Source of the DNA: Selaginella moellendorffii
Taxonomy: Eukaryota; Plantae; Lycopodiophyta
Assembly (NCBI RefSeq): GCF_000143415.4
Contig: NW_003314392.1
Coordinates: 220,390-284,389, forward strand
DNA length: 64,000 nucleotides
Direction of reading: 5' to 3'
Part shown: positions 31,200-63,954 of the stretch, in pieces
How positions within the stretch are numbered: the stretch's first letter is position 1
Layout of the letters: each line of letters begins with the position of its first letter
Position numbers and translations under genes: made by a program
Notes under the pieces: model-generated
What the model was told of the DNA's origin: nothing
The model's input: the letters and a program-made list of their open reading frames with translations, nothing else
The model's database searches: none

Positions 31200-31580
31200 A
31201 TAATAAAATTTACAAGCATTTATTTCCTAAAATGAGAATTATATTAATTAAAAAACCCTAGCTTATATACAGGAGCAAGTGGTCCGGATTAAAACTAATC
31301 CAATATCTATCAAAATCTCATTATGCTAATATTAATATATAATTGTTAATATATAGTTGTTAATATTAGTATACGGCATTGTAACCATACACTTAGACTT
31401 TACATCATCCTTTATTCTTAAAAGGATGGAATGCAATCAAGGTTCTTTAGGTGATAATTTGGGATTTTCAGGAACATCAAGAGGAGGCATTAGTGGATTT
31501 ATAAATGGTATTAATTATTCATGATCCTTTTGTATGAAACACTTCAACTATTGTAAATGCATAATTTCTAGAGGATCTAA
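31200..31580 (-). mobile_element. Degenerate 3' end (pol tail, PPT, 3' LTR) of gypsy family X
   Basis: ~31505-31580 matches the reverse complement of ~63930-64000; 31251-31404 matches the X LTR at 57893-57971 plus 59081-59120; purine tract at 31405-31420. Confidence 0.75.
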
Positions 31581-31589
31581 AGATTCCTT

Positions 31590-34644: not shown

Positions 34645-34744
34645 NNNNNNNNNNNNNNNNNNNNNNNNNNNNNNNNNNNNNNNNNNNNNNNNNNNNNNNN
34701 NNNNNNNNNNNNNNNNNNNNNNNNNNNNNNNNNNNNNNNNNNNN
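34645..34744. other. Assembly gap (further gaps at 58092-58304 and 58813-58912)
   Basis: Runs of N. Confidence 1.
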
Positions 34745-35119
34745 CCCCCCCCCCGCTTCCATCCTGAAAGGAAGGTCCAAGCCCCTAGGAAGGGCGAGGA
34801 CCAATGAGCCGCATGGTACTCAAGTGGGGCACCACTCCACATGAGCTGGGAGCACCGCAGTCGGTTTCCCTTTCGGGAGTGGGAGTTGCTCTTGAGCACT
34901 TTCTTGGATGGCCCCTCCGGCACCAACCACGTCCATGCTCACTCCCACCCAAGGCCCCTCAGTCCCAGTCCTAACCTCAAGTCAGTTTGGAAGCCCCACT
35001 GGAGAGTTCCTTCAAAACTGGTTCCTGGACCTCACTATCCTTACTATACTTTTGGAACCCCCTACAGGCCCCCCCCCTTAGGAGACGCATGCTTTGGGCT
35101 TTCACCCCTTGACCCGTAT

Positions 35120-35415
35120 TAGTACTCGGACTTAGTCTCTGGCTCGATCTCGGACTCGATCTCGGATCTGACTTCAGATTTGGTCTCGGACTCGATCTCG
35201 GACTCAATCTCAGACCCGACCTCGGATTCGACCTTGGACTCGGTCTCGGACTCGATTTTGGATCTCGGACTCCGTCTTGAACTCGGTCTCGAACTCGATT
35301 TTGGATCTCGGACTCCGTCTTGAACTCGGTCTCCAAGTCGGCTTCGGACTCGATTCCGGACTCTATCTCGAACTCGGTCTCCGAGTCGGTCTTGGACTCG
35401 ATCTCAGACTCGGTC
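35120..35415. repeat. Degenerate 6/12-bp minisatellite (CTCGGACTCGAT) in the Z LTR; also at 41530-41780
   Basis: Directly visible. Confidence 0.9.
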
Positions 35416-35886
35416 CCATCTGATGAACTTTTTATCATTTTGGTCATGCTTTCGGGGATCCTTTAGCCTACGACACTTTGGGGAGTTGGTTCCTTACAAT
35501 TCCACCACCCATAGAAGAAGTTCGATGCCCACATCGAACGTCTCTTTTTTATCCTACAACTTGTTGACCATGTCTCCGAGGCATCCCCCCACTTAGCGGT
35601 ATGCCTAAGTTAACCTCCCCAGCCAAGAGCCTATGACAACAGAATATAGGTGTCCTTATACTCCTCACCTCACCACGCCCTAGTATGGGGTCGGGACTTG
35701 AACCCAACCTTGCTTTACTAAGGGGTTGGGACTCGAACCCAACCTTCGTAGAATACGTCTACGGGTTCGACATCCCCGCAGAGAGCTGGGTGTAGTTCCC
35801 TACGCCTGGTCAACCTAGCTAACCCATGCTAATTAGCTTACCTTCGGCGCGCCTTCGGGTCCCAACATATGCTATTGCCCAACTTC

Positions 35887-40671: not shown

Positions 40672-43600
40672 CTCCCAATAATCTGCCTCTATCCTTCGCT
40701 AGAACTGAGGAAAAGGCTCCGATACCAAATTGTAAGCCACAAATTTTTCCTTTCCAATTTGCCAGCTTACCTCATCTATCCGTCCAACATGGCCTTGGCT
40801 TTTGCTAAGTTCCCTCACCAAGGTTCCCGCCTATGGTACCAGCTCCTACTTGGTCCTACTTGGTTTTAGCTACTCACTGCACGAGCAACGGAGTGTTAAC
40901 CATCCATCCACAGATTCCTAAATCTCTCATAATCCCCCTCCCCAGGTTAGAATGAACTTAAGGTTCGGCTACACTCCCCACAAGCACAAGCAGCCAAGCA
41001 CACCAAGCTTCAAGGTTCCTAACATCCCTTGGTACCACAAGACTTGATCATGGGACCCTCTAAATCCCAAATTTTGGGTGCAACACTTGCTTCGAGACGC
41101 CGGGGCGAAACACCGTGGCCTAACGGCCCGGTATGGGTACCTCTACCCCCGCCCCCCCCCCCGCTTCCATCTTGAAAGGAAGGTCCAAGCCCCTAGGAAG
41201 GGCGAGGACCAATGAGCCGCATGGTACTCAAGTGGGGCACCACTCCACATGAGCCGGGAGCACTACAGTTAGTTTCCCTTTCGGGAGTGGGAGCTGCTTT
41301 TGAGCACTTCCTTGGATGGCCCCTCCGGCACCAACCATGTCCATGCTCACTCCCACCCAAGGCCCCTCAGTCCTAGTCCTAACCTCAAGTCAGTTTGGAA
41401 GCCCCACTGGAGAGTTCCTTCAAAACTGGTTCCTGGACCTCATTATCCCTACTATACTTTTGGAACCCCCTGCAGCCCCCCCCCCCGGGAGACGCACGCT
41501 TTGGGCTTTCACCCCTTGACCCGTATTAATACTCGGACTCAGTCTCTGGCTCGATCTCGGACTCGATCTCGGATCCGACTTCGGATTCGGTCTCGGACTT
41601 GATCTCAGACTCGATCTCGGACCCGACCTCGGACTCGACCTCAGACTCGGTCTCGGACCCGATTTCGGATCTCGGACTCCATCTCGAACTTGGTTTCCGA
41701 GTCGGCTTCGGACTCGATTCCGGACTCTATCTTGAACTCGGTCTCCGAGTCGGTCTTGGACTCGATCTCAGACTCGGTCCCATCCGATAAACTCTTTATC
41801 ATTTTGGTCATGCTTTCGGGGATCCTTTAGCCTACGACACCTCAAGGAGTTGGTTCCTTACAGTGGGATGTACTCAAGGAGTTTTCCGAGGCTATGTGGA
41901 TGAATAAAAAGTTCAACAACAAGTCAAAAAGTTACTTGAGTTTAGAATTAATTAATTCTTTGTTTAGTGCCTCAATCTTTCTTATGCAAAAGAAGGATAC
42001 TTCAATATGGATATGTATTAACTACCATGCTATAAACAAAAAGATAATGAAAGATAAGATGCCGATGCTATATGTGGGTCATATTGGGCCAATTGACATA
42101 GTATAGGCAGTTGTTAGCTCTTTGGAAGAGTGTTAATACTTTTCACTTGGCTATAGTCTACTTGGAGAAAGTTTCTTCTAATTTTTGTTTGCTAGTGTCA
42201 TGAATATGACTTCGGGATTGAAAGTTACCTGTCGGCCAATCCTTATAGACACTTTTTTCTTACTGCCACGACAGCAAAAGGTCGGTATTGCTGGACCCTT
42301 TATCAATCCCTTTTGTGTTAGTGGAGTTAATTGGGCATTTCGAGTGTACTTAGACCGGACAAGCATAAGGACGGAATTTTTACGTACTATTAACTAAGCA
42401 TCCTTAGCTCGGTAAGGAGTTCCTATCTCGTTATATCTTGCACTGGCTAGTGACAAGAACCCTTGCGTATTGAGTTTAATCCCTCAATATCATTGGATGA
42501 TAGCTTACCATGTCTGCCAAACACCCTCGCTATCATGCCCTTTGTGTTAGTCTCATTCTAGTCCCAAATACTATTTATAGAAAGTGTCCAGATTTGCTCA
42601 TTTTGGCATATTTACGGAATGTAGAGATTGTCTTGAACACAATGGTGTTCGTCCTATGTCCAAATTCGTAATCTAGGAACATTCCATATTTAGTAAGTTT
42701 CAAGTTTATCCTAAAGACTAACTCCTGATACTAAGGGAGGCTTGGGGTGAAAGCCCAAAGCGTGTGTTTCTGAAGGGGAGGGGGGGGGGAGGGCTATAGG
42801 GGGTTTTAAATGTATAATAGGGATAATGGGTAGGTCGGGCATGGCCGACCAACTTAAGGCATAGTCTAGCTTTTACTTGCATGCTTGTCCTTGTTCTACG
42901 TCTGGCTTACTAAGCCCAAGTTCTACACCATGCTAGCTGATAGAGTACCCATATCCTTGCGTTAGGCCACCAGTATGCTAAAATAGCACTAAACTCTATT
43001 TGGCTCCATTTTGCATGTTGGTCATAATATTGGGATATTAGTTGCTTTAGGATTGTTCCAAGTCGCTCTTTACTCCTGCCCCTTTGCTCCTTGGGCTCCA
43101 TGCTTGGGAATTTGGCACCATTCCTTTGTTTAGTGGCCTAAGGTTTTGAAACTCGGGTTCCACTCCACTATCCTTTGGACATGTGGCATGTGACACATGG
43201 CATATAACACATGGCACATGGATGGTTTAGGTTCTGCTTCGTGGTTATCCTATGGTAAATCACTATAGGATAAAGGGTAAAAACCATGTGTGCTACATTT
43301 GGTATCAGAAGGATGAGTCTTGGCAAGTACTATCCAATGAGATTAGGCAATTAGTTTTGTTGCATACGCAAAGATGAAAACAATGATCCGAGTGGATACA
43401 CGTTTGGGTGCAAAGGCTTTGCAATTGTTCCTTGGATATGGATTTAGTTACTTTGTTATACCATATTATGTGAGCTTGCTCTTGGGCTCATAGGATGGAA
43501 TGAGATATTTTGTTTGCACAAATTTATGCTTGGGTGAGTGAGTGAGGCACATTAGTATGAGCTTATGCTTGGGCTCATGAATGAGGCACATTAGCAACTC

Positions 43601-43689
43601 AAGGTTACACTTTGAGTTGGCAGGATTAATATTAGCCTATCAGTGGTTCCATGAGTTGTTCCAGTGGTTACGTGAGTTTATCCATGTAC

Positions 43690-46600
43690 TATAGGAAAAA
43701 GTAAAAGGCATAATTACAAGTGGATCAACCAAGATTATAGGGATTAGTCTGTTGGTTCAAGTAATCATTACCGTGCTCTCTCATAAACTTTTCTTGAATC
43801 GAATTAAAGGTAGTGCAAAAGCAAGTTTGAGGTTTGGTCAAAGATGAGACCGAAAAGAGAATCGTTGGAGATGAAGGATCAAATACATAAATTATTATTT
43901 TTTTTTGGAGAGATGATTTGCAATGAAGTGTTAATTTATTGCTTGTGTTCACATCATGCAATTAAGAGTCCCTATCTTGATGCATGTTGGAGATAATGGT
44001 CTTACAAATGGCAAGTTGTGGGATGGATAGCGATGAAGTGCTATACCATTTTGTCTAGGCTTGCTATTGAAGATTTAGGTTGTAATGCTCAATTTTTTTC
44101 TAGAGAATCTTGCTATTGCTCTTCAAGTAGCTTGGTGTTAAATTAGTTTTGAGTTTGGTCGAAAAGAGAGTGGCATGAGCTTGTCCGTGTTGTGAATAAA
44201 AGTTAGTGGTGTTGGGTGTTGTAAATCTTTATCGGTGGAGTGTAGCATTTATGTTACATTTTGTCAAATCGAGTTAACACTTGATATTCACATAAACCTT
44301 TGAAGTAGTGACATGGGTATTGCTCATTATGTTGCTCAATTGATGATCAAGTCATTGTGATATTTATATCATATCTATGTGATAATAAGCAATGTGTTTG
44401 CGAAGTTGCTTGGTTAAATGATAATCAACCCCAAAATGGTTGATGGTGAAACTAGTTTACTTACATGTAGTAGCATTATAATAGTTTTGACTATATTCCC
44501 AATGGTTATCCATTATGTTAAGTTTAAGTTGTACCTTGTTTCCTTAAGTGTTTGCCCATTGAAGTGTTGGAAAGGGGTTATAGCATTCATTTGTTATAGC
44601 TTGTCAGTTGATCCATTAGCACTTAGAGTAAATTGTTGGATGGAGAAGGTATGTAGTTGAGGCATTGACATCGTTAGCATCTGTGTTAGTGGCAGTGGCA
44701 TTGTTATTTAGAGTGATGAGAAATTCTCCTTAGACCTTGATTTTCCATGTCATTTTTTTTGTTAGTGCTTTGGCTATACATTGGATCTTGAAGGTGATTG
44801 AAGAGGAGTGTTAATGCAATATGGATATCCGAAAATGTAGTCTTCACGATCAAGCTTTAGATGTTCATTTTGCATTTTACAAATGTCAATGTTGGAAGTT
44901 AGAGATATGGGCATGATGTTTAATGCTTAAGTATGCTATTGGGTCATGAGAATTGGTGTTGAGGTGAGCCTATGTGAAATTGTTAGTAGGAGGAAGTTGG
45001 TTGAGTCTTGAAAGTTTGTATTGTTAGACTGAGAGTCATTCTTTCTCTAGGATGGAAAATTTTTCCACAAATTTTTTAAAGCTTTTTCAATGGCTGATCT
45101 ATTATCACTTTAACCATTCTATTTTTATAAGTTAATACAAACTAGTGAAGGGGTTGGAGTTGACTTCGGTTAGCTTAGACCTTAGTAGGTGGTTTGTATA
45201 ATGCGATCTAAAAAAGATGCTAACTTTCAGTTGAGTTGAGTTGGATAGAGTTTGGAGTTAGTGTAAAAAAGTGGTCATTGCGCTTTTCTAAGAAGGGTGA
45301 CCCTTGTGCCTTTCTTCTATAGTGTTATGCTTGGTAGCAAATTGCACTTTGCATTTCGTTAAAACTCTATGAGAGTAGTGAACTCTCATTGATCTTGATT
45401 TGATATTAGTGGCCCTACGCCTTGGCTGAGGATGGTGATATTCAACTTAGTTGTTTAAGGTTCAGATGTTAGTATCCATACTATAGCTTTGTCTATGAAA
45501 GGTTGTGTACTAATATGAACCCATCTCATGGTCTTCATTTTAGTTTCGACTAAGTGTTAATCATGCATAGCTAGCATTTTCAAGGCATGCTCAGAGGTAT
45601 TGGCTAAATGCATTAGTGAGCTTATTATGGTTGAATTAGATTCAAGTGGTCATTTAATTTGTGTTTGTCTATAAATCTTTATCTCGTACCTAGGGTATTA
45701 TGTTCATGTTGGACAAGTATATAACTTGATGACATGAGTTTAGTGTTCAGGTCTTATGAAAGCAAGCTGAAGAGTGATTGTTAATTGTTTTATGATTAAT
45801 GATTGCTTGTAGACTTTATCAAGGATTGTTTGACACTTGCTTCCCTTGATGATCATTTAGCAATGATGAGCTTATTTTACCGAATGGTGTTGTGGAGGAT
45901 TGTGTCATTAGACTTACATGGTTTTTCCATGTTGGTATATCGATTCTATCTTTGTCGATATCATTTGGTTGCATTTAGTTTGTAATGTTAGATTTCATTA
46001 AGTCTTGGATGTGGTGAATCACTCCTTGATGATGTGTTATTTAAAATTGAGTATTGTTAAAAGATTAGTCTTGAATACTGAATAAAGTATCTTTGACATT
46101 GGTTAGCGTAGTTGCTAGAGAGTTTTGAGTGGTGATTCACTCTTGCTTTTTTATAACTTTGTTATGGTGTTGATGGCATTTAAATGATGTCTTGTTATTG
46201 ACATTGTTGATGTTGAGATTTGAGTGAAATGCGATATCTCTCCTTAAAGATTGATATTGAGTTTCATTAGTTTCAATGAAGATAGTGTTGATGATTTGGC
46301 TATAGCTTTGTGTTATTGGCATTCGTGCATTTGCTAGTTAGCAACTATATTAACGTTCAAATGAACTAAGTGGCAAGTTGAGTTAGTTGTGTTTTAGAAG
46401 AGATTGTTTAGTAGGGGTTAAGCTTTGAGCTTTCTTTGAAAAGTGATTTAGTCATGGACAATGCTAATTCTATGAGAGGATGAATTAGTGATCAATATTG
46501 AAAATGTTGAATTCTTTATATTGATCATTAATGATTTCTTTTGTGCTTGTTATAAAGTGAATTACGTCTTGCTATAAATGGATTCATGGAGGAGTGTTTA

Positions 46601-47730: not shown

Positions 47731-50023
47731 CTTTAGTCATGGGGTAGCTATTGTCGACTGGTCACATCACCCACTTTTCTGTCGATGTTCCTTATTCCGT
47801 TAAAAGGGCGTGACGATATAAAAAACTCTAACTACTTGTTTACAGTAGTTTACCTAAACCTTACCGACAGGTTTAGTTTCTTTACTCATGAGGGTTGGGG
47901 CCCTTAGCTTCTCTCTCTATATCCCTGTACGCAGGGGCATATCACACTTTTGTAAGCTAGGTGACACCTAGAGCAGCATGGGTGGTTAACTCTATTGGTC
48001 ATTTCCTTGTCGGTGACAGCTGGAAGGTGTCTAAGTGGGTAGGGCATTTGCATTAGGCATAGAGGTTGCCTTATAACTCATTTAAGTTGGTGCATTTTTC
48101 ACATAATGTGAATACTGTGAACTATTTTTGGAGTTGTTTTCTTGGCAGTATTTTAGACTAGAGTATGCATTGACGAGGATGTCAATCTTCCCTGTCGCGA
48201 ATGTGATTTCGGGTATCGAAAGTTACATGTCGGCTAATCCTTATGGACACTCTTTTTTTATTGCCACGACAACTAGAGGTCAGTATTGTTAGACCCTTTA
48301 TCAATCCCTCTTGTGTTAGTGGAGTTAACTAGGCATTTCGAGTGTACGTAGACCGGACGAGCATAAGGATGGAATTTCTAAGTACTATTAGCTAAGCATA
48401 CTTAGCTTGGTAAGGAGTTCCCATCTCGTTATATCTTGCATTGCTTAATGATAAGAACCCTTGTGTATTGAATTTAATCCCTCAATATCGCTAGATGATA
48501 GCTTACCGTGTTTGCCAAACACCCTCGCTATCATGTCCTTTGTGTTAGTCTTATTCCGGTCACAAATGCTATTTATGGAAAGTGTCCAGATTTACTCATT
48601 TGGCATATTTACGGAATGTAGAGATTGTCCTGAACACAATGGTGTCGTCCTATGTCCAAATTCACAATCTAGAGACATTCTATATTTAGTAAGTTTTGAG
48701 CTTGTCCCAGAAACTAACTCCTGATACTAAGGGAGGCTTGGGGTGAAAGCCCAAAGCATGTGTTTCTCAGGGGGGGGTTATAGAGGGTTCCAAATGTATA
48801 ATAGGGATAATGAGGTATAATTTAGCTCTTACTTGTGTGCCTGTCTTTATTCTACGTTTGGTTTGGGTTTAAGCCCAAGTTCTACACCATGTTAGCTGGT
48901 GGAGTACTCATATCCTTGCATTAGACCACTAGTATGCTAAAATAGCACTAAACTCTATTTAGCTCCATTTTGTGTGCGGGTCCTAATATTGGGATGTTGG
49001 TTGCTCTAGGATTGTTCTAAATCACTCTTTACTCCTACCCCTTTGCTCCTTGGGCTCCATACTTGGGAATTTGGCACTATTCCTTTATTTAGTGGCCCAA
49101 GGTCCTGAAACACGGGTTTCACTCCACTGTCTTTTGGACATGTGGCATATGACACATGGCATATAACACGTGACACATGGATGGTTTACGTTCCGCTTCA
49201 TGGTTATCCTATGGTAAATCACTATAGGATAAAAGGTAAAAACCACATGTGCTACATTTGGTATCAAAAAGATGAGTCTCAGCAAGTACTATCCAATGAG
49301 ATTGGGCAATTAATTTTGTTGCATACGCAGAGATAAAAACAATGATCCGAGTGGGTACATGTTTGGGTGGAAAGGCTTTGCAATTGTTCCTTGGGTATGG
49401 ATTTAGTTACTTTGTTGTATCATATTATATGAGTTTGCTCTTGGGCTCATAGGATGGAATGACATGTTCCGTTTGCACAAATTTATGCTTGGGTGAGTGA
49501 GTGAGGCACATTAGTACAAGTTTGTGCTTGGGCTTGTGAATGAGGCGCATTAGCAACTCAAGGTTACACTTTGAGTTGGCAGGATTAATATTAGCCTATC
49601 AGTGGTTCCATGAGTTGTTCCAGTGGTTACGTGAGTTTATCCATGTACTATGGGAAAAAGTAAAAGGCATGATTACAAGTGGATCAACCAAGATTATAGG
49701 GATTAGTCTGTTGGTTCAAGTAATCATTACCGTGCTCTCTCATAAACTTTTCTTGAATCGAATTAAAGGTATTGTGAAAGCAAGCTTGAGGTTTGGTCAA
49801 ATATAAGACTGAAAAGAGAGTCGTTGGGGATGAAAGATCAAATACATAAATTTTTTTTTTTTTTTTGGAGAGATGATTTGCAATGAAGTGTTAATTTATT
49901 GCTTGTGTTCACATCATGTAATTAAGAGTCCCTACCTTGATGTATGTTGGAGATAATGGTCTTACAAATGGCAAGTTGTGGGATGGATAGCAATGAAGTG
50001 CTATACCATTTTGTCTAGGCTTG

Positions 50024-52468: not shown

Positions 52469-53923
52469 ATGCATTTTGATGGTTTCACATCCAACAGAAA
52501 GATGAGGTTTCCAGTAGCAGCCTATAATGGATCTCGTCCTAGCTTGGAGGTAGATCTCTTTGTTGCAAACAAGCTCATTGACATGTATGGAAGGTGTGGA
52601 AGCATAGGGGATGCACTGTCGGTCTTTCAAAGCCTCAAAGAACGGGACTTCTTCTCCTGGCACTTTCTGCTCTACGGGTATATCCACAACGGGTATATAG
52701 AGGAGGCTAAACTCCTTTTTACTCGAATGCCATACAGGGACATTGTCTCCTGGACTGCTATGTTAGCTGCGTATGCCAAGAGCAACCGTTTGGAGGAAGC
52801 CAAGGAGGTCTTTGACATGATGCCCCTGAGAAATCTCTTCTCTTGGACGTCGATGCTGGTTGCGTATGCCCGGAATGGGCATTTGCTTGACGCAAAACTT
52901 ATGTTTCTCGAGTCCCCTGAGACCGACATGGTATCTTGGACAGCGTTGCTCACGGCGTACGCGCAAAATGGCTCTGTTAAGAGCGCCATAAAAGTTTTTG
53001 AAGAGATGCCCGAACACGACATTGTTGCTTGGAACGCTATCCTAGCTGCCTGTGCCCAAAACGGGCATATAGAACTGGCTCTAGCAACTTTCTCCAGAAT
53101 GCCTGAGAGGAGTTTGACCTCGTGGAACACAATGCTGGCAGAAGGACCACAGCTGCATTCGTCTGACCAAGTATCTCAACTCTTCAAGGAAATGCCAGAG
53201 ACTAACCTTGTCTCCTGGACTTCTTTGCTAGCAGCTCACGCTCGGGACGGGCATCTGGAGTTATCAAAGTGTACCTTTGACTCCATGCCTGAGTGGAGCA
53301 CTGTGACCTGGAACGCACTTCTTTCGGTTTACAGCCGTGGAGATTCGACAGAGCAGACCGACAGCTTGTTTCGCAGAATACCAGAACCGGATCTCGTCTC
53401 TTGGAACGCACTCTTGGCATCATACGCTCGAAACAGCCACGTTTCTAATGTGATCGTCGTCTTCCACCAAATGCCGGCTCGAAACATTATCTCATGGACT
53501 ACGGCTTTGGGTGCCTTGATCCAAGACGGGAACCTGGAACTTGCTTCGAGGATGCTAGACCAAATGCCCGAGACCGATCTCATCTCAGTCAGCCAGCTTC
53601 TCTCTGCTTATGCTGTAAACGGACATATGCTTGAGGCATTTCAGATGTTCTTCGCAGCAAACCTCGTCTATGCTATCGACCAAGCTTGCTTTGTTTCGTT
53701 CCTGATCGCGTGCAGCCACGTTGGTTCGCTGGATCTCGCAAGGTCCTACTTTCTGTCGATGGCGGGCGACTTTGGGATCCAATCCACGAGGCAGCACTAT
53801 TGCTGTCTAGTCGATCTTCTAGCCAGGTCGGGCTACTTGGACGATGCCAGAGAGCTCATCCACACAATGCCATTTTTTCCCGGAACTTTGGAGTGGACGT
53901 GCTTGCACTCCGTCCGTGCGTGA
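52469..53923 (+). CDS. SS/PLS-type PPR protein with truncated E domain
   Basis: 484-aa ORF with repeats of MP..D.VSWT.LL.AYA.NG; HYCCLVDLLARSG; ends MPFFPGTLEWTCL. Confidence 0.85.
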   Translation: MHFDGFTSNRKMRFPVAAYNGSRPSLEVDLFVANKLIDMYGRCGSIGDALSVFQSLKERDFFSWHFLLYGYIHNGYIEEAKLLFTRMPYRDIVSWTAMLAAYAKSNRLEEAKEVFDMMPLRNLFSWTSMLVAYARNGHLLDAKLMFLESPETDMVSWTALLTAYAQNGSVKSAIKVFEEMPEHDIVAWNAILAACAQNGHIELALATFSRMPERSLTSWNTMLAEGPQLHSSDQVSQLFKEMPETNLVSWTSLLAAHARDGHLELSKCTFDSMPEWSTVTWNALLSVYSRGDSTEQTDSLFRRIPEPDLVSWNALLASYARNSHVSNVIVVFHQMPARNIISWTTALGALIQDGNLELASRMLDQMPETDLISVSQLLSAYAVNGHMLEAFQMFFAANLVYAIDQACFVSFLIACSHVGSLDLARSYFLSMAGDFGIQSTRQHYCCLVDLLARSGYLDDARELIHTMPFFPGTLEWTCLHSVRA

Positions 53924-55548
53924 TCAATCTTATTGCTAGTTTGCGAGAGAATTTTCCATGTTATATTATCAGCTTCGACAGGCATCTCTTCCATCATGAT
54001 CATGGCCTCGTCAAGCTCATCCGCCCTGGCAAGAAGATCAATGACACAATGGTAATGAGCCGTGCTTGGCCGGACTTCATACCAGGAAGACATGAGCTGC
54101 AACCAAAGCTTCCCCTCCTTGACGAGGCCGCAGTGGTTGCACACAGCGAGAATGGACAAGAAGGTTGCACTGTCTGGCTTCAATCCTGCATCTATCAGTT
54201 GATAAAACTCTTCAAACACGAGTGTGGAGTCTCCCTTTTGACTATAACCTTCCAGTAGCGCATTCCAGCTTACCAAGTTCCTCTTCAAGGACGTGGAGTC
54301 GAAAACATGCTGAGCGGCAGCCATGTTGCCACATTTGCCGTAGAGATCGAGCAAACAAGTGAGCAGGACACTGTCAGGCTCAAATCCACGCCTGTGAATC
54401 TCGCGGTGGATCGTTTTTCCAAGTTGCAATGAAGGAAGGATCGCACAGGCCTTGAGTGCACAGGAGCACGTCCAAAGATCTGGCCTGCATTGCAGATCAC
54501 CAGACACCATCTCCTGGTATAACTCTAGAGCCAAGTGGGCTTCACCACTTTCAACATACCCGAGAAGCATAGTGTTCCATGAAACACAGTCCCGGAGACG
54601 CTCTTGAATGTTGTCGAAGGCAGTGCGTGCGTCCACCAAGCTACCACACTTGGAATACATGTCAACCACACAATTGGCGACATAAACATCTGACACAAAC
54701 CTCCTCCTTGCAGCCTCTGAGTGCAGTGCCATGCCTTTCTCGAGACTTTTCACCTTGACAAGTTCTCCATCGCCGAGCTCACATCCATCTTCCTTTCTCG
54801 CAAGGTTTGAGCAAGCTTTCAGCGCTACAACGAAAGTCCGAGAGTTTGATGCTGCACACGAGGAAACGTGAGAGCTGGACTCGAGGGACTCAAACAGCTC
54901 CAGAGCAATCTCACCTTGATCGTTGTCAACATATCCCAGCATCAGTGTGTTCCATGAAACCACGTCGAGTGTTTCCATCTCTTCGAAGGCTCGCCTCGCA
55001 TCTTGCATGCTCCCACACTTGGAGTACATGTCGATGAGGCTGCTTCCAACGTAAAAATCCCTCAAGACGAGGTTTTGCATTCGAGATCGAGCGTGAATCG
55101 CCATTCCCCTCTCCAAGCTTGTCATCTTCCAGGGATTTGCTCCTTCTTCCTCAGCAAGGCTCGTGACGGCCTTAAGAACCGCGACGAAAGTGCGACCATT
55201 CGCCACGCATTCTGCTTCCATGGCAAGGAAAAGCTCCAGAGCTCTTTCGGAAAAATGCCCGCTCACAGCATATGCTCGAATGAGCGCATTCCATGCAATG
55301 GCGTCGCGGTGCTTCATCTTGTGGAACACTTTGCTGGCGTCCACGAGACTGCCACACCTGGAGTAGACGGTGACAAGGCTGCTAGCAACGTAGAGATCGT
55401 CTTCCAAACCATTGTCAATAACACTAGCATGGATTTTCCTTGCCTCGCCTATATCTCTACAGGACTTGAGCTGCGACAGCACGAGCGCGACACCTCTCAC
55501 ACTTGCATTGCTCGAGTGCTGGAATGAAGCCACCGGCCATGGCTGCAT
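53833..55548 (-). CDS. PLS-class PPR protein with truncated E domain
   Basis: 571-aa ORF; MYSKCGS..AR..F, VSWNTLMLGYV, HYHCVIDLLARA, MPVEADNITW. Confidence 0.85.
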   Translation of the reverse strand: MQPWPVASFQHSSNASVRGVALVLSQLKSCRDIGEARKIHASVIDNGLEDDLYVASSLVTVYSRCGSLVDASKVFHKMKHRDAIAWNALIRAYAVSGHFSERALELFLAMEAECVANGRTFVAVLKAVTSLAEEEGANPWKMTSLERGMAIHARSRMQNLVLRDFYVGSSLIDMYSKCGSMQDARRAFEEMETLDVVSWNTLMLGYVDNDQGEIALELFESLESSSHVSSCAASNSRTFVVALKACSNLARKEDGCELGDGELVKVKSLEKGMALHSEAARRRFVSDVYVANCVVDMYSKCGSLVDARTAFDNIQERLRDCVSWNTMLLGYVESGEAHLALELYQEMVSGDLQCRPDLWTCSCALKACAILPSLQLGKTIHREIHRRGFEPDSVLLTCLLDLYGKCGNMAAAQHVFDSTSLKRNLVSWNALLEGYSQKGDSTLVFEEFYQLIDAGLKPDSATFLSILAVCNHCGLVKEGKLWLQLMSSWYEVRPSTAHYHCVIDLLARADELDEAMIMMEEMPVEADNITWKILSQTSNKIDHARTECKHVHSKVPGKNGIVWMSSLASSK

Positions 55549-57661: not shown

Positions 57662-57971
57662 TTAGCTTGGAGCTATGGTGTGGCTCCATTTCAAGAAAGA
57701 TATATATATATAAAAAACACACACACACAAATTCACATGGAACAATGAGCTTGTAAACCAAACAAAGGTGATTGATTTGCTTGAGGTGATCTTTTACCAT
57801 AGTCTTGCTAGAAGAAAATTCCATTTGTAGGAGAATCAGTAACTCAAAGAATAATTAATAGAGCAAGTTTTTGTTTCTGTTATATTTTCATCTATGAGGG
57901 CCAAGTGTACAGCTACGATGCCGTATACTAATATTAGCGTAGTGGATTTTGGTAGCCGTCGGATTGGTTTC

Positions 57972-59075
57972 TGTAACACACGTGGTTTTGACCCTTTATC
58001 CTATGGTGATTTACCATAGGATAACACCACGAAGCGGAACCTAAACCCTCTTTGTGCCACGTGACAGATGCCACGTGTCCATGCCACGTGTNNNNNNNNN
58101 NNNNNNNNNNNNNNNNNNNNNNNNNNNNNNNNNNNNNNNNNNNNNNNNNNNNNNNNNNNNNNNNNNNNNNNNNNNNNNNNNNNNNNNNNNNNNNNNNNNN
58201 NNNNNNNNNNNNNNNNNNNNNNNNNNNNNNNNNNNNNNNNNNNNNNNNNNNNNNNNNNNNNNNNNNNNNNNNNNNNNNNNNNNNNNNNNNNNNNNNNNNN
58301 NNNNAATGGAGTCTGGCGCTATTTCGGCATACCGGTGGCCTAACGTGAGGATATGGGTACTCCACCAACTAGCATGGAATGGAACTTGGGCTTAGACCCA
58401 AGCCGGACGCAGAACAAGGACAGGCACGCAAGCGGGAGCTAAACTATGCCTCAGGTTGGTCGGCCATGCCCGACCTACCCACTATCCCTACTATACATTT
58501 GGAACCCCCCACAACCCCCCCCCCCCCCCCCGTAGAAAGTTAATAATTATGCAGTTGCGCTATCATGCCAAGTTGGAGACCGGATGAAAACCGTTGGGTG
58601 CAGGCCAACTCCTACATTCTGTAAATATGCCCAATGGGCCAATCTAGACACTTTTCCTAAAAAGCATTTGGGACTGAAATAGTCCTAACCCAAAGGGGCT
58701 GGTAGCAAGGGTGTTTAGCAAACACCGTAAGCTATCCTCTAGGGGTATTGAAGGGCCTAGCTTAATATTGGGGGGCTTCTGATATTAGCAAGTGCAAGCC
58801 CATGATTTAAGTNNNNNNNNNNNNNNNNNNNNNNNNNNNNNNNNNNNNNNNNNNNNNNNNNNNNNNNNNNNNNNNNNNNNNNNNNNNNNNNNNNNNNNNN
58901 NNNNNNNNNNNNCTTTGTTCAGTGGCCCAATGCCCTGAACCTCGGGTTCCTGTGGACACGTGGCATGGACACGTGGCATCTGTCACGTGGCACAAAGAGG
59001 GTTTAGGTTCCGCTTCGTGGTGTTATCCTATGGTAAATCACCATAGGATAAAGGGTCAAAACCACGTGCGCTATA
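57972..59075. mobile_element. Family Y insertion with inverted LTR ends: minus LTR 57972-58513 with PPT and 3' internal; plus LTR end 58913-59075; contains two assembly gaps
   Basis: 57972-58091 is the near-identical reverse complement of 58956-59075; GTTTC at both 57967-57971 and 59076-59080. Confidence 0.85.
58954..58991 (+). promoter_or_regulatory. Triple ABRE/G-box array in the Y LTR (mirrored at ~58056-58091)
   Basis: GGACACGTGGC x2 plus CACGTGGC. Confidence 0.6.
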
Positions 59076-59204
59076 GTTTCAATCCGGACCACTCGCTCCT
59101 GTATATAAGCTAGGGTTTTTGGGCTAATTGAGATGCACATTTCTGTATTCCCTTTTCATATTCCATGCACTCACATTGGTGGAGGTGAGGGGCACCTTTG
59201 ATTG

Positions 59205-59706
59205 TCCCTGGGGAGTGCTTGGATTTGGGATTTCGGTTTAGATCTAGCTTTTGCATTGTCTAGATCTAGCTTTTTCCATTTCCTTTCTTTTGTTCTTTCC
59301 TTTCAGGATTTTGGTTTAGATCTAGCTTTTTGCATTGTCTAGATCTACCATTTCTTTCCAGCTTTTTGTCATTTCTCTTCTTTTGCTCTTTCTTTTTCAT
59401 TCATTTTCATGGCCGATCCGCAATCTCCTCCTTTGACTCTAGAGCAGCAATTGGTTCCCTGGGGAGTGCTTGGATTTGGGATTTCGGTTTAGATCTAGCT
59501 TTTGCATTGTCTAGATCTAGCTTTTTCCATTTCCTTTCTTTTGTTCTTTCCTTTCAGGATTTTGGTTTAGATTTAGCTTTTTGCATTGTCTAGATCTACC
59601 ATTTCTTTCCAGCTTTTTGTCATTTCTCTTCTTTTGCTCTTTCTTTTTCATTCATTTTCATGGCCGATCCGCAATCTCCTCCTTTGACTCTAGAGCAGCA
59701 ATTGGT
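59205..59706 (+). repeat. 251-bp tandem duplication of the X leader and gag start
   Basis: ATGGCCGATCCGCAATC at 59409 and 59660. Confidence 0.95.
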
Positions 59707-60592
59707 TCAATTGCTTGATGCTATGCGCTTGCAATTGAACAACCAAACTCAGTTGATGGCGGCGTTCACGGCACATGGTACAACTCCTCCTGCTTTTGGT
59801 GGCAATCCTCGCGTTCGGCCGGAGTTCTTTCGTGGGAATCTTGGGGATGATGTGTACCATTGGTTCGATCACTTCACGGTGATTGCCACATATCATTCTT
59901 AAGATGACGCTCGACGTTTGCGTGAGTTCCCCACATGTCTCCAAGGGACGGCATTGCAGTGGTACAATGGATTGAGCGCAGCTACTCGTGGCGATTGGAG
60001 TGTTCTTCCGGACGTCTTCAAACGCGCCTTCGGACACGCCGACGATTGTGATGATGCCTTCCAACAATTGCATCGTCTTCGCCAAGGGCCATCTGAGTCG
60101 GTGATGCAATTTGGTGTTCGTTTCCGAAGTCTTTTGCTTCGTGCGGAGCCAAATATGTCGGAGCGGATCAAGCTAGGAATGCTGTGGCCAGCACTTCGTC
60201 AAGATCTTGTCGGACTTGTGCATGCACTTGCTCCTGCCACTCTTGACGATGCTCTTCGCTTGGCACAACGTTATGAGACGTCGCCTCTTCCACTTCTTGC
60301 TACACGTCCTTCAGCTCCACTTCCTATGAGTGATGGTCCTGTTCCCATGGAGGTTGATGCTGCTGCTACTCGAGTCCAAGGACAAGGGCGAGGACGTGGT
60401 CGTGGCCGTGATGTTCGTTGCTGGGCGTGTGATGAAGTTGGTCATACTTATTGGCGTTGTCGGCGCTTTCCAGATTGGCGACCTCCATTTCCTGGGTGGA
60501 GACCTTGGCGTCAGCAACGTCCCGTTGGTGCTACTGTGGTGGAAGGTTTGGATACCGAGGTGCATTCGGGAAACGAGGAGTCGCGCGAGTAA
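59660..60592 (+). pseudogene. Family X gag with one premature stop (59900-59902)
   Basis: PEFFRG..DVYHWF, LQGTALQWY, LRQGPSESVMQF, PVPMEVD, zinc knuckle CWACDEVGHTYWRC. Confidence 0.9.
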
Positions 60593-60631
60593 TGGAGGGA
60601 CCTTGCGCGAATAAGTTAGTGACCCCTCCAT
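60568..60631 (+). promoter_or_regulatory. -1 programmed ribosomal frameshift signal (slippery heptamer plus H-type pseudoknot)
   Basis: G_GGA_AAC in the gag frame; 6-nt spacer; stem 1 60581-60589/60602-60610; stem 2 60592-60599/60624-60631. Confidence 0.85.
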
Positions 60632-63600
60632 CTTTCTTTCGGGAGTATCATCAAGGGGTTCACTCGGCACCGGTTCATCCAGTGTTTACTTTTCAAGCTC
60701 GTTTTTATAACAAGAGGTCTCCTATTCTTCTCTCCGTGTTGGTTGATACAGGTTCGAATTTATCTTCTATTGCTCGACCTGTTGCCACACGTTGTCGTCT
60801 ACACTTGCGTCGTGCGGCAGATCCAGTTTTCATTCTTTATGGCAATGGCCGTACACGTGCATGTGCACGAGATGAGGCGGACCTGGTTGTACGTGTGGGT
60901 GATCTCGAGCTTGAGTTGCAGTCGTTGCGGGTGGTGCCGAGTCAAGCTTTTGACCTCATTCTTGGTATGGATTGGTTGCAGCACAATCATGCCAAGTGTG
61001 ACTTTGAGGCTTCTCCCCCTTGTCTCATACTTCCTTATGTTTCATCTATTCCTCTCACTTCCGTACCTCTTCGTCCCTCTATTTCTACCTCTGCTTCCAT
61101 TACTTTTGTTCCCCCACTATTTCCTCTTGTGTTTCCATCTTGTTCTGCTCTTCCCTTTTCCAATCCCTCCAATGATCTTTGTGTTGCAGCTGTTGACCAG
61201 CTCATGAAGGAGTATTCTGATCTCTTTGAATTTGACCTATCGTCTGGGGCCAAGATTGCCACACGTCATCCCATTCCAACTGGGGATGCTCGTCCAATCA
61301 AGGTTCCTGTTCGTCGTCGGTCACCCAAGGAAATCAAGATTTTACGTGCAAACGTTAAGGAGATGTTGGAGAAGGGTGTTATTCGGAAGTCGCGGAGTCC
61401 TTGGGCATGTGAACCTCATCTTGTGACAAAGCCTGATGGGAGTATTCGTTTCTGCATCGACTATCGTCCGTTAAATGAAGTGACGATCCCGGACGTGTAC
61501 CCTCTTCCTCACACTGCTGATCTCTTGGATCGTCTGGAGCGAAGTCGTTGGTTCACCAAGCTAGATCTTGCTTCTGGGTATTGGCAAGTACCGATGGCTG
61601 AAGAAGATATTCCTAAGACTGCTTTTCGTACACCATTTGGTTTGTACGAGTTTTTGGTGATGCCGTTTGGTTTGAACAATGCTCCAGCAACTTTTCAGCG
61701 GATGATGGACGAGGTTCTTTGCGATATGCCGGAGGTGACGGCTGACTTCATTGATGATGTTTTGATCCACTCGGAGGGGACCTGGGAGGAGCATGTTCGT
61801 GATGTTTGTAAAGTGTTGGATCGGCTACGCGACGTTGGTTTAAAGCTGAAGCGGTTGAAGTGCGTGTTTGGGTCCAAGGACACAACTTATCTTGGGTACC
61901 GTATTTCTCGTGAGGGTTTGCAAGTTGATCCTGACAAACTTGTGGCTGTTTTAAAGTTCCCTACTCCGAAGTGTGTGAATGATGTGCAGCGCTTTTTGGG
62001 GCGCTTTTTGGGTAAGGTGCAGTATCTCGGTCGTTTTGTGGATCATCTTTCCGATCGCACTACACCATTGCGAGCGTTGCTGAAGTCATCAACGTCATCT
62101 TTCATCTGGTCTCCTGATTGTGAGCGGGCATTCGTGAATCTCAAAGAGCTATTGACGACTCCTCCGGTTTTGGCATATCCTGACTACACTCGACCTTTTA
62201 TTTTGCGCGTGGATGCTTCTGACATTGGTCTTGGAGGTGTGTTGATGCAAGAGAGCTCGAGTGTGCCTGGTCAGCGCCATCCCATTGCATACATAAGCCG
62301 TACATTACAACAAGTGGAGATGAACTACTCCACGACGGAGAAGGAGTGTTTAGCAGCAGTCTGGGGTTTCGAGAAACTTCATGCATATCTATATGGTTCT
62401 TGGACGTTACTTGAAGGTGACCATGCTGCTGTTACTTCATTATTGAAACGGAAGAACCTGGTTGGTCGTACGGCTCGATGGGCTTTGAAGCTTCAGATAT
62501 ATGATTTCGATGTTGTTCATTGCCCAGGGAGTTCAATGGCTAATGCTGATGCCCTTTCTCGAGCTCCTCTTCCTTCTCCACTCCATTCTCATGTTTATGA
62601 CGAACCTGTTGTTCCAGCATCTGTGGATTTTCTAGATGAGGATTCTGTGCCGTCGGCGGTTGCTGTCCTTGACGTTCAGTGTCCACAGGGCGTAGAGCAA
62701 GATCTACCTTCTCTGGATGAGGTTCGCGAGGCTCAAAAGATTGAGCCGTGGATTCGAAGGCTTCGAGATGGGTTTGAGAATCCTGCATCACTTGCTGATG
62801 ACTTGCCTTTTCGGCATTTACATTCTCAATATCGCCTTGAAGATGGCCTTCTTTATTTTGTGGGGACGGATCCTGATGATCATTTACGGCTAGTGGTGCC
62901 TTCGGTGTTTATTCCGCGGTTTCTCCATGCCTACCATGATTCTCCTATTCTAGGTGGGCATATGGGACACCGTCGTGTCACCGAGAAGCTGCGCAGATCT
63001 TTCTATTGGCCAGAGATGCGACGTGATATTATCCGGTATGTGCGTAGCTGCGTTTGGTGTCAAGCTCGTAATACTCCCCCTTGTGCTGCGGAAGGATGGT
63101 TGGAGTCAATTGCAGTTTCTCGTCCGTTTGAGTTGGTGGCGTTTGATCTTATGGGACCTTTTCCGCGATCAACTGCTGGCAATGAGTATGTTATTATTGC
63201 TTCTGACTACTTGACTCGTTGGGTGGAAGTTGGTGCTCTTGCTAGTGCCTCTGCAATTGCTGTTGGATACTTCCTCCTCAATCGAGTGGTGTTCCAGCAT
63301 TCTTGTCCAGAGCGGATTCTTTCGGATAATGGTCCTGCATTTATGGCTGAGGTATTTCATGTTTTGACATCTCGGTTGGGGATACGCCACACTTTTACGA
63401 GTGCTTATCATCCACAATCAGACGATCTGGTGGAACGGCTCGTTCGGACATTCAAAGGGATGATTGCGAAGTATGTGAACTTTCAACATTCGGATTGGGA
63501 TGGTTATTTGCCGTCTCTTCAGTATGCTTATGTCACAGGGGTGCAGAGTTCTATTGGTGCTTCACCATATAAACTTCTATATGGTCATGATCCAATATTA

Positions 63601-63954
63601 CCAACAGAGCTGGGTTTACCTTTGCGATTGCCACGAGCTCCTGATGCTAGGTCATGGGATCAATATTTGACAAGCATTCTTCCACTTGTCCGAGCAGAGT
63701 CTGTTGAACACTTAAGCCGCGTACAAGTGGGACAACAACGGCACTACAATTCCCATCATCGTCCACCTGCGGAGTACAAAGTGGATGATTTGATGTTAGT
63801 CCGTTTTCCCCATCTTACGGTACGTGGTTTATCTAAGGGGCTCCTTGCGCAGTGGAAAGGACCGTATCGGGTGTTGCGGCAAGTTGGACCACAAGTTTAT
63901 GAGGTTCGGCATAACATTCAGCAGGCCGATCCTCCGGAGATTGTGCATGTGTAG
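60568..63954 (+). CDS. pol: Family X pol (protease, RT, RNase H, integrase) in the -1 frame relative to gag
   Basis: LVDTGS, LDLASGYWQ, MPFGLNNAPATFQ, DFIDD, VDASDIGLG, HDSPILGGH..CVWC, FDLMGP, LSDNG, LVER. Confidence 0.95.
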   Translation, partial: GKRGVARVMEGPCANKLVTPPSFFREYHQGVHSAPVHPVFTFQARFYNKRSPILLSVLVDTGSNLSSIARPVATRCRLHLRRAADPVFILYGNGRTRACARDEADLVVRVGDLELELQSLRVVPSQAFDLILGMDWLQHNHAKCDFEASPPCLILPYVSSIPLTSVPLRPSISTSASITFVPPLFPLVFPSCSALPFSNPSNDLCVAAVDQLMKEYSDLFEFDLSSGAKIATRHPIPTGDARPIKVPVRRRSPKEIKILRANVKEMLEKGVIRKSRSPWACEPHLVTKPDGSIRFCIDYRPLNEVTIPDVYPLPHTADLLDRLERSRWFTKLDLASGYWQVPMAEEDIPKTAFRTPFGLYEFLVMPFGLNNAPATFQRMMDEVLCDMPEVTADFIDDVLIHSEGTWEEHVRDVCKVLDRLRDVGLKLKRLKCVFGSKDTTYLGYRISREGLQVDPDKLVAVLKFPTPKCVNDVQRFLGRFLGKVQYLGRFVDHLSDRTTPLRALLKSSTSSFIWSPDCERAFVNLKELLTTPPVLAYPDYTRPFILRVDASDIGLGGVLMQESSSVPGQRHPIAYISRTLQQVEMNYSTTEKECLAAVWGFEKLHAYLYGSWTLLEGDHAAVTSLLKRKNLVGRTARWALKLQIYDFDVVHCPGSSMANADALSRAPLPSPLHSHVYDEPVVPASVDFLDEDSVPSAVAVLDVQCPQGVEQDLPSLDEVREAQKIEPWIRRLRDGFENPASLADDLPFRHLHSQYRLEDGLLYFVGTDPDDHLRLVVPSVFIPRFLHAYHDSPILGGHMGHRRVTEKLRRSFYWPEMRRDIIRYVRSCVWCQARNTPPCAAEGWLESIAVSRPFELVAFDLMGPFPRSTAGNEYVIIASDYLTRWVEVGALASASAIAVGYFLLNRVVFQHSCPERILSDNGPAFMAEVFHVLTSRLGIRHTFTSAYHPQSDDLVERLVRTFKGMIAKYVNFQHSDWDGYLPSLQYAYVTGVQSSIGASPYKLLYGHDPILPTELGLPLRLPRAPDARSWDQYLTSILPLVRAESVEHLSRVQVGQQRHYNSHHRPPAEYKVDDLMLVRFPHLTVRGLSKGLLAQWKGPYRVLRQVGPQVYEVRHNIQQADPPEIVHV

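What the first reader, a model, noticed from the sequence alone, without database searches (positions are those of the whole stretch)
57955..59095. One TSD, two identical LTR ends: inverted (U5-U5) family-Y insertion at a palindrome inside another retrotransposon's LTR
Seen: both junctions present the same 3' (U5) end of the Y LTR pointing outward (GTTTC|TGTAACAC.. and ..GCGCTATA|GTTTC), so one 5-bp duplication bounds inverted LTRs. Removing the insert restores the palindrome CGGATTG-GTTT-CAATCCG in the X LTR, and an uninterrupted paralogous site lies at ~31280-31300. Known: a normal LTR integrant has a U3 end at one junction and a U5 end at the other. Flipping the middle contig or recombining inverted LTRs does not change the outer ends. 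Inference: either Y integrates as a head-to-head dimer with inverted termini, or Y is sequence-specific for this palindrome and two X LTRs (or two haplotypes) hit in opposite orientations were joined across the gap. Either would be unusual.
Basis: partly seen in the sequence, partly recalled or inferred. Interest (0 to 1): 0.85.

Follow-up and report, generated by a model that had tools for sequence, protein, structure and literature searches.

The report
Retrotransposon insert with two U5 ends
In the clubmoss Selaginella moellendorffii, a piece of a retrotransposon's long terminal repeat sits inside another retrotransposon with the same (U5) end facing outward on both sides and one 5-bp target duplication. 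This suggests that integrase joined two like ends, which is known in the test tube but which I could not find described in a natural genome.

Summary
The Y-type insert is 57972-59075. GTTTC is duplicated at 57967-57971 and 59076-59080. Both outer ends are the U5 end of the Y LTR. Reference Y LTRs at 42196-43297 and 48193-49256 each end in that sequence and are followed by a tRNA-Met-type primer binding site.

The window is S. moellendorffii scaffold GL377696.1. The host element X is an intact Ty3/gypsy element with 172-bp LTRs. X plus its insert is absent from the matching scaffold GL377649.1, where the two outer flanks abut. The right-hand contig runs without a gap from the Y arm through X and its uninterrupted 3' LTR into that flank. 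Both junctions therefore belong to one X copy at one locus.

The interior is unresolved because of two gaps. As scaffolded it is about 1.1 kb: most of one LTR in minus orientation plus an inverted copy of the last ~175 bp or more. A full head-to-head dimer is not shown.

Best reading (0.55): one integrase event on a DNA with two U5 ends. Reads could not be obtained. The scan's first readers noted five similar cases in this genome, none checked.

The parts
57895..57971 (+). X (Ty3/gypsy) 5' LTR, first 77 nt, including the left TSD copy
   Evidence: Starts TGAGGG, exactly where colinearity with the other haplotype ends. Matches X's own 3' LTR.
57960..57966 (.). Left stem (CGGATTG) of the target palindrome. 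The loop GTTT is 57967-57970. The right stem is C (59080) plus AATCCG (59081-59086).
   Evidence: Stem 7, loop 4, found in the insert-free reconstruction. The diverged copy at 31.3 kb keeps the pairing through a change on both sides, read.
57967..57971 (.). Left copy of the target-site duplication GTTTC
   Evidence: Present once in the three uninterrupted X LTRs.
57972..58091 (-). Left arm: Y' LTR positions ~1102 to 983, U5 end outward (TGTAACAC...)
   Evidence: 86% identical to the reference Y LTR end 43297-43179.
58092..58304 (.). Assembly gap, 213 N
   Evidence: Colinear across the gap in minus orientation. About 178 bp is expected from the reference LTR.
58305..58812 (-). Middle contig: Y' LTR positions ~809 to ~243 in minus orientation as placed
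   Evidence: If flipped it would be colinear with the right arm instead.
58813..58912 (.). Assembly gap, 100 N. The orientation switch lies here as scaffolded.
   Evidence: 100 N may be a floor or a placeholder, since two of the four gaps seen are exactly 100.
58913..59075 (+). Right arm: Y' LTR positions ~929 to 1102, U5 end outward (...GCGCTATA)
   Evidence: Lies in one gap-free contig with X and X's far flank.
59076..59080 (.). Right copy of the target-site duplication GTTTC
59081..59175 (+). X 5' LTR, last 95 nt, with a TATA-like motif at 59102-59108. It is followed by a PBS-like TGGTGGAGG... at 59177-59192.
   Evidence: 172 nt in all, 3 differences from the 3' LTR.
59918..63954 (+). X gag (59918-60592) and pol (60451-63954) reading frames
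   Evidence: Pfam: Retrotrans_gag, then aspartyl protease, RVT_1, RNase H and integrase.
42196..43312 (+). Reference Y LTR (42196-43297) plus PBS (43300-43312), which defines the U5 end
48193..49271 (+). Second reference Y LTR (48193-49256) plus a degenerate PBS
31251..31394 (-). Diverged X-like LTR fragment with the site uninterrupted

Best explanation
A non-autonomous, gypsy-type LTR retrotransposon (here Y') produced a faulty DNA copy whose two termini were both U5 ends. That copy held most of one LTR plus an inverted copy of its last ~175-260 bp. An integrase supplied in trans by a coding element bound the two like ends and inserted them in one concerted reaction with a 5-bp stagger. The target was the loop of a 7-bp-stem palindrome 73-77 nt into the 172-bp 5' LTR of a Ty3/gypsy element present on one of the two matching scaffolds.

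Shown:
- Both ends are U5.
- There is one TSD.
- There is one locus and one X copy.
- The target is a palindrome.

Inferred:
- A single integrase event.
- The size of the interior.
- How the two-U5 substrate arose. Two routes fit. In the first, the nascent minus strand folds back and copies its own 5' end (copy-back). In the second, the U5 ends of two incomplete cDNAs are brought together and their inner ends are joined by host repair.
For: Junction anatomy:
- Each junction puts the exact LTR terminus next to a direct copy of GTTTC. This is the signature of integrase, not of recombination or replication slippage.
- The end is U5, because in two reference copies it is followed by a tRNA-Met-type PBS.

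One locus:
- X plus the insert (L001 1275-7653) is missing from GL377649.1, where the two flanks meet.
- The right contig is gap-free from the Y' arm to that flank, and X's 3' LTR is empty.

Target: the TSD centre is 0.5 nt from the palindrome centre, which holds for only 0.2% of positions by chance. A symmetric intasome on a symmetric or bent target is in line with reported palindromic target preferences of LTR elements (PMC6911290).

Biochemistry: Ty1 integrase carries out full-site concerted integration in vitro with donors that mimic only the U5 end (PMC8487063).

Precedent: faulty reverse-transcription products integrated as one unit have been proposed for plants (PMC1950507).

Age: the Y' arms keep CpGs that are TG/CA in the older Y copies, which fits a recent insertion.
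Against: - The interior is not sequenced (313 N). The inner junction that would show a copy-back or an end-joining scar is missing.
- No reads could be laid on the locus.
- The right end is TA, not the CA that integrase needs, so at least one later mutation must be assumed.
- The two arms differ at 3 of the outer 7 nt and at 0 of the inner 113 (P about 1e-4 if the differences fell at random). No model here explains this.
- The scaffolded length (1104 bp) is close to one Y LTR (1064-1102 bp). That would also fit a pre-existing family whose LTR carries long inverted ends.
Confidence: 0.55

Rival explanations
1. The ~1.1-kb unit existed before this insertion. Either it is a solo LTR of a Y' subfamily whose LTR start has been replaced by an inverted copy of its U5 end, or it is a multi-copy TIR-type unit built from LTR ends. 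In this reading the locus is an ordinary copy of an unusual family.
For: The scaffolded insert (1104 bp) is within about 40 bp of the Y LTR length. The segment to the right of the middle contig (263 bp with the gap) is about as long as the LTR start it would replace (~243 bp). The termini follow the TGTNR pattern shared by gypsy LTRs and Ginger transposons (PMC2836005). A related clubmoss has TIR elements with 100-150-bp TIRs and TA..TA or TG..CA ends (PMC6839031).
Against: None of the three older Y copies in the window has an inverted U5 sequence at its LTR start. No second copy of the unit exists in the 64-kb window or in the two fetched loci. LTRs with inverted ends longer than 100 bp are not known to me. 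The length match rests on a 100-N gap that may be a placeholder.
Confidence: 0.2
2. Two separate Y' insertions in opposite orientations hit the same five bases at this locus one after the other. The unsequenced centre would then hold two U3 ends around a third GTTTC.
For: The site is a palindrome, and LTR elements show some preference for palindromic targets (PMC6911290). Orientation is expected to be random at a symmetric site. The centre is unsequenced.
Against: This needs two hits on the same pentanucleotide of one X copy, although the reported palindrome preference is slight. The first insertion would also split the palindrome. Two uninterrupted copies of the same X LTR were seen. The scaffolded length leaves room for one LTR, not two.
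Confidence: 0.06
3. This is an assembly artefact. One junction contig is chimeric, or the scaffold joins pieces that are not neighbours in the plant.
For: Two gaps lie inside the insert. The middle piece is only 508 bp. The inner 113 nt of the arms are identical while the outer 7 differ three times, which might reflect pooled reads. X has at least one other copy at 97% identity.
Against: Both junctions lie inside contigs, and both contigs are tied to the same empty site in L002. A chimera would still need a real Y'(+)/X junction at the same base somewhere else. In the one testable case the gap size was accurate to 2 bp (182 N against 184 bp).
Confidence: 0.09

Closest known systems
Canonical LTR-retrotransposon integration (Ty3/gypsy and Ty1/copia type)
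   Same: 5-bp target-site duplication, TG/CA-type termini following TGTNR, insertion into another element's LTR, and a palindromic target context.
   Different: A normal integrant has a U3 end at one junction and a U5 end at the other, with LTRs in direct orientation. Here both junctions are U5 and the LTR pieces are inverted.
In-vitro concerted integration with like ends (for example, Ty1 integrase with U5-only donor oligonucleotides, PMC8487063)
   Same: Two U5 ends are inserted on opposite strands of one target in a single full-site reaction.
   Different: That system is a test-tube reaction with separate short donors. Here the product sits in a genome as one continuous insert, so the inner ends were either already joined or were joined afterwards.
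Complex LTR-retrotransposon insertions made by template switching during reverse transcription (Sabot and Schulman 2007, PMC1950507)
   Same: A faulty reverse-transcription product is integrated as one unit.
   Different: Those are described there as fusions of two parent elements that share an LTR. This one is inverted and shows the same end twice.
Ginger and GingerRoot DNA transposons (integrase-related transposase; PMC2836005, PMC6839031)
   Same: Terminal inverted repeats of about 40-270 bp, termini of the TG..CA or TA..TA (TGTNR) type, and short TSDs. GingerRoot was found in a Selaginella species.
   Different: Their TSDs are 4 or 6 bp (5 bp only in TDD-4 and TDD-5). They encode a transposase and are 2.6-13 kb long. 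Here the arms are homologous to a retrotransposon LTR with a PBS, the TSD is 5 bp, and the unit is about 1.1 kb with no room for a gene.
DIRS-type retrotransposons
   Same: Inverted terminal repeats on a retroelement (abstract of PMC3950715, listed).
   Different: DIRS elements use a tyrosine recombinase and, from my own knowledge, make no TSD. Here there is a clean 5-bp TSD and exact TG/CA-type ends.
Copy-back (snap-back) products of polymerases, such as copy-back defective viral genomes and hairpin self-priming by reverse transcriptase (own knowledge)
   Same: A long arm plus a short inverted copy of the molecule's own starting end, which gives two identical termini.
   Different: I know of no described case in which such a product of an LTR element has been integrated. 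The inner junction that would prove copy-back lies in the gap.

Membership tests
Canonical LTR-retrotransposon integrant (full element or solo LTR) | One junction is the U3 start and the other is the U5 end, with LTR sequence in one orientation | tested here: not met
   Both junctions align to LTR positions ~983-1102 of the reference Y LTRs, in opposite orientations.
Canonical LTR-retrotransposon integrant (full element or solo LTR) | Target-site duplication of 4-6 bp, usually 5 | tested here: met
   GTTTC on both sides, single in three uninterrupted X LTRs.
Canonical LTR-retrotransposon integrant (full element or solo LTR) | 5'-TG ... CA-3' termini | tested here: inconclusive
   The left end reads TG. 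The right end reads TA instead of CA, one transition away in a CAG context.
Y family is an LTR retrotransposon | Direct LTRs with TG..CA ends, followed by a primer binding site complementary to a tRNA 3' end | tested here: met
   LTRs at 42196-43297 and 48193-49256 run from TGTC... to ...CTACA and are followed by TT and then TGGTATCAGA. The match to the tRNA-iMet 3' end comes from my own knowledge.
Y family is an LTR retrotransposon | Internal gag-pol coding region (autonomous element) | tested here: not met
   No Pfam family at E<=0.01 in ten stop-free pieces of 55 aa or more from 43.3-48.2 kb, both strands. Y is therefore treated as non-autonomous.
GingerRoot / Ginger TIR transposons | TIRs of about 40-270 bp with TGTNR or TA termini | tested here: met
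   Arms of at least 120 nt starting TGTAA / TATAG (PMC2836005, PMC6839031).
GingerRoot / Ginger TIR transposons | TSD of 6 bp (GingerRoot), or 4 bp (Ginger1 and most Ginger2; 5 bp in TDD-4 and TDD-5) | tested here: not met
   The TSD is 5 bp. The bases outside it differ.
GingerRoot / Ginger TIR transposons | Integrase-related transposase gene, or many non-autonomous copies sharing the TIRs | not testable with these tools
   The ~1.1-kb interior is LTR sequence and gaps. No second copy is present in the window, L001 or L002. The rest of the genome could not be searched.
DIRS-like elements | Tyrosine recombinase and no target-site duplication | tested here: not met
   A clean 5-bp TSD is present. 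No coding capacity was found.
X is a Ty3/gypsy element | gag, then protease, RT, RNase H and integrase in that order, between direct LTRs with a TSD | tested here: met
   Pfam order. The 172-nt LTRs differ at 3 positions. The TSD is imperfect, CATCTA against CATCC.

The most novel reading that the evidence does not exclude
Integration through two like LTR ends (U5/U5, and by the scan's other notes U3/U3) is a recurrent natural pathway in S. moellendorffii. It turns faulty reverse transcripts into short units with terminal inverted repeats and a TSD. Such units would be natural intermediates between LTR retrotransposons and integrase-type TIR transposons of the Ginger/GingerRoot kind.
Probability: 0.25. 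Interest if true: 0.8.

Novelty: new variant of a known kind. Interest (0 to 1): 0.6.

Why it matters
Integrases of retroviruses and LTR elements are known to accept two copies of the same end in vitro. In the three literature searches I ran for it, I found no natural genomic product of that reaction. A locus where an empty allele ties both junctions to one insertion would show that like-end integration happens in vivo. It would give a handle on faulty reverse-transcription intermediates in plants. It would also show a simple route by which LTR ends can become the inverted repeats of a TIR-type element. The claim can be tested directly with one PCR or a few long reads.

Tried and rejected
Steps that gave nothing:
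One later pattern search (metagenome contigs, 0 hits) used 34 letters of the Y' arm. I ran it before asking whether the decline might concern the letters themselves. After that I sent no more letters of that stretch to collection searches.
- Sampling other X LTRs in the genome for Y insertions: a homologue search with X pol found nothing closer than 48% identity, so no further X copies could be fetched. Y's target specificity remains untested.
- An exact look-up of the 571-aa PPR reading frame found nothing. The annotated 551-aa models did work.
- Literature: three searches for natural inverted-LTR or like-end integrants found none. The genome paper for this species was not held under the id I recalled.
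- A search for inverted microhomologies in the reference LTRs that could seed a fold-back was uninformative. The only conserved pair lies outside the region allowed by the right arm.

Readings considered and rejected:
- Mirror-image (fold-back) duplication of the left junction. The right flank is X's downstream LTR with its TATA-like motif, not the reverse complement of the left flank.
- Replication template switch through the 7-bp palindrome stem. This predicts GAAAC next to the right arm, but GTTTC is observed.
- A DNA transposon whose TIR starts at CACGTGG. The bases just outside are not duplicated, and they match the LTR terminus of the reference copies.
- Y(-) in X's 5' LTR plus Y(+) in its 3' LTR. 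The 3' LTR is empty.
- Two haplotypes. The matching scaffold lacks X.

Gap sizes: one gap could be checked and was accurate (182 N against 184 bp). The 100-N gap in another LTR (34645-34744) could not be sized, because the 43 bp before it do not match the partner LTR.

Full report
**What is in the sequence.**
- At the left junction the X LTR sequence ends ...cggattgGTTTC and is followed by TGTAACACACGTGG. At the right junction ...CCACGTGCGCTATA is followed by GTTTCaatccgg.
- Counting bases, the insert is 57972-59075 and the duplicated GTTTC is at 57967-57971 and 59076-59080.
- The outer 120 nt on each side are inverted copies of each other (57972-58091 and 58956-59075). They differ only at positions 2, 5 and 7 from the outer end.

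**Which end of the LTR it is.**
- The window holds two older members of the same family in plus orientation, at 42196-43297 and 48193-49256. They are about 1.1 kb long and 85-89% alike.
- Both start TGTC... and end ...GTGCTACA. Both are followed by TT and then TGGTATCA.... From my own knowledge this is the usual primer binding site for initiator tRNA-Met.
- A third, partial copy lies at 31582-32563 on the minus strand.
- The stretch between the two reference LTRs gave no Pfam family at E<=0.01 in ten stop-free pieces. I treat Y as non-autonomous.
- The arms of the insert keep CpGs that are TG or CA in the older copies and never the reverse. The insert therefore belongs to a younger or less decayed subfamily, which I call Y'.

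**The gaps.**
- The left arm (LTR positions ~1102 to 983) and the 508-bp middle contig (positions ~809 to 243) are both in minus orientation. They are colinear across the 213-N gap, where the reference copy predicts about 178 bp.
- Across the 100-N gap the sequence is not colinear. The right arm is LTR positions ~929 to 1102 in plus orientation.
- If the middle contig were flipped, it would be colinear with the right arm instead (about 119 bp expected against 100 N). Its orientation rests on the assembler alone.
- Either way the outer ends stay U5.
- As scaffolded the insert is 1104 bp: a long arm of roughly 860-960 bp and a short inverted arm of at least 163 bp.

**Where the window comes from, and why that matters.**
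- A PPR gene 2.4 kb to the left of the insert identified the window as Selaginella moellendorffii, assembly GCA_000143415.2, scaffold GL377696.1. L001 is 100% identical to the window and has the same gaps.
- This assembly holds both haplotypes of one plant as separate scaffolds (PMC3095285).
- The gene's 90% cluster has exactly two loci. The second lies on GL377649.1 (L002).
- L002 is colinear with the window at 96% identity up to base 57892. It then continues directly with the sequence that, in L001, lies beyond X's 3' LTR.
- In L001 coordinates, 1275-7653 (6379 bp, X plus the insert) is simply absent from L002.

**X.**
- X is a Ty3/gypsy element with gag and a 1167-codon pol frame.
- Its LTRs are 172 nt long. 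The 5' LTR with the insert removed differs from the 3' LTR at 3 positions.
- X's own TSD is imperfect, CATCTA against CATCC.

**Consequence for the artefact readings.**
- The left contig carries the unique left flank, the first 77 nt of X's 5' LTR and the minus-oriented arm.
- The right contig has no gap from the plus-oriented arm through the rest of the 5' LTR, gag-pol and the 3' LTR into the unique right flank.
- Those two unique flanks abut in L002. Both junctions therefore belong to the same X copy at the same locus.
- The matching scaffold has no X, so it cannot have supplied one of the junctions.
- X's own 3' LTR reads through the site with a single GTTTC. So does the LTR of another X copy in L002.
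- A chimeric contig is still conceivable. It would need a real Y'(+) insertion at the same base of another X copy.

**The target.**
- With the insert removed, the site is CGGATTG, GTTT, CAATCCG. The TSD centre lies 0.5 nt from the palindrome centre.
- Only 0.2% of positions in the window lie that close to the centre of a palindrome with a stem of 7 or more.
- The diverged LTR fragment at 31251-31394 keeps the pairing through a change on both sides (GGATTA...TAATCC).
- Published surveys report only a slight general preference of plant LTR elements for palindromes, and a clear palindromic consensus for Tos17 (PMC6911290).

**Mechanisms that do not fit.**
- A mirror duplication of the left junction, or a template switch through the 7-bp stem, would put GAAAC next to the right arm. 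GTTTC is seen.
- Recombination between inverted LTRs leaves the outer ends unchanged.
- Exact LTR termini next to a direct 5-bp repeat are the mark of integrase at both ends.

**Best explanation.**
- One concerted integration of a DNA whose two ends were both U5.
- An LTR-element integrase can do this in vitro. Ty1 integrase gives full-site products with donors that mimic only the U5 end (PMC8487063).
- Plant elements are thought to integrate faulty reverse transcripts as single units (PMC1950507).
- Two routes to the substrate fit the long-arm and short-arm layout. Both are inference.
  - Copy-back: the growing minus strand, having copied U5, R and most of U3, folds back and copies its own 5' end.
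  - Two molecules: the U5 ends of two unfinished cDNAs are paired by integrase and their inner ends are joined by the host. From my own knowledge, the U5 end is the first double-stranded end made during reverse transcription.
- The inner junction that would decide between them lies in the 100-N gap.

**Rivals.**
- The main rival (0.20) is that the unit is older than this insertion. It would be a solo LTR or TIR-type unit of a family whose LTR start is an inverted copy of its U5 end. The physical structure is the same and only the history differs.
  - For it: the scaffolded length is close to one LTR.
  - Against it: no older Y copy has such a start, and no second copy was seen.
- Two successive hits on the same five bases (0.06) and an assembly artefact (0.09) remain possible.

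**Unexplained.**
- The three arm differences all lie in the outer 7 nt. All are C-to-T changes on the LTR plus strand. The inner 113 nt, with six CpGs, are identical (P about 1e-4).
- Arm-to-arm gene conversion that spares the edges, pooled reads, or damage to frayed cDNA ends could each produce this pattern. None was tested.
- The right end is TA rather than CA.

**Limits.**
- Gap sizes in this assembly can be accurate (182 N against 184 bp in L002). However, 100 N occurs twice among four gaps and may be a floor.
- The rest of the genome could not be searched for other Y' or X copies.

**Other notes of this scan.** First readers flagged three more two-U5 inserts and two two-U3 inserts with single TSDs in this genome. 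None has been checked. I count them as leads, not as support.

Noticed in passing
window 42196-44063 and 48193-50023: The two older Y copies share not only the LTR but also the PBS and about 770 bp of interior (89% over 1.87 kb). The arrangement is therefore LTR-interior-LTR-interior in tandem rather than one element with two LTRs. It may be a complex element of the kind ascribed to template switching or unequal recombination.
   Followed up: partly
window 57972-57978 and 59069-59075: All three differences between the inverted arms lie in the outer 7 nt and are C-to-T on the LTR plus strand (one CpG, one CHG, one CHH context). The inner 113 nt are identical.
   Followed up: partly
window 57890-57894 and L001 1270-1274: X's own target-site duplication is imperfect (CATCTA on the left, CATCC on the right; the empty site in L002 reads CATCC). 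X plus its insert is present on only one of the two matching scaffolds.
   Followed up: yes
window 59205-59706: A perfect tandem duplication of 251 bp lies in X's leader and gag start. It contains an ATG (59410) and shorter internal repeats of a tagatctagc motif.
   Followed up: no
window 34381-35498 and 40731-41862: These form the LTR pair (about 91% identical) of another element. The 43 bp before the 100-N gap at 34645 do not match the partner LTR, so something else may be inserted there.
   Followed up: partly
window 52469-53923 (+) and 53833-55548 (-); L001 1-1217; L002 5151-7607: Two intronless PPR genes converge and overlap by 91 bp. Partial PPR-like copies lie just beyond X on both matching scaffolds.
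   Followed up: no
L002 14986-19094: A second X copy (97% identical, minus strand) sits at a different site on the matching scaffold and is absent from the window's haplotype. Its 3' LTR abuts a long (TA)n run.
   Followed up: partly
window 31251-31394: A diverged X-like LTR fragment keeps the target palindrome through a paired change (GGATTA/TAATCC against GGATTG/CAATCC). This hints that the hairpin or a dyad binding site in U3 is conserved. It lies 190 bp from a minus-strand Y fragment.
   Followed up: no
window 42295-42304 and 43269-43278: The older Y LTRs carry a 10-11-nt inverted repeat (ACCCTTTATC / GATAAAGGGT) between U3 position ~100 and U5 position ~1075. The motif is also present in the arms of the insert.
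   Followed up: no
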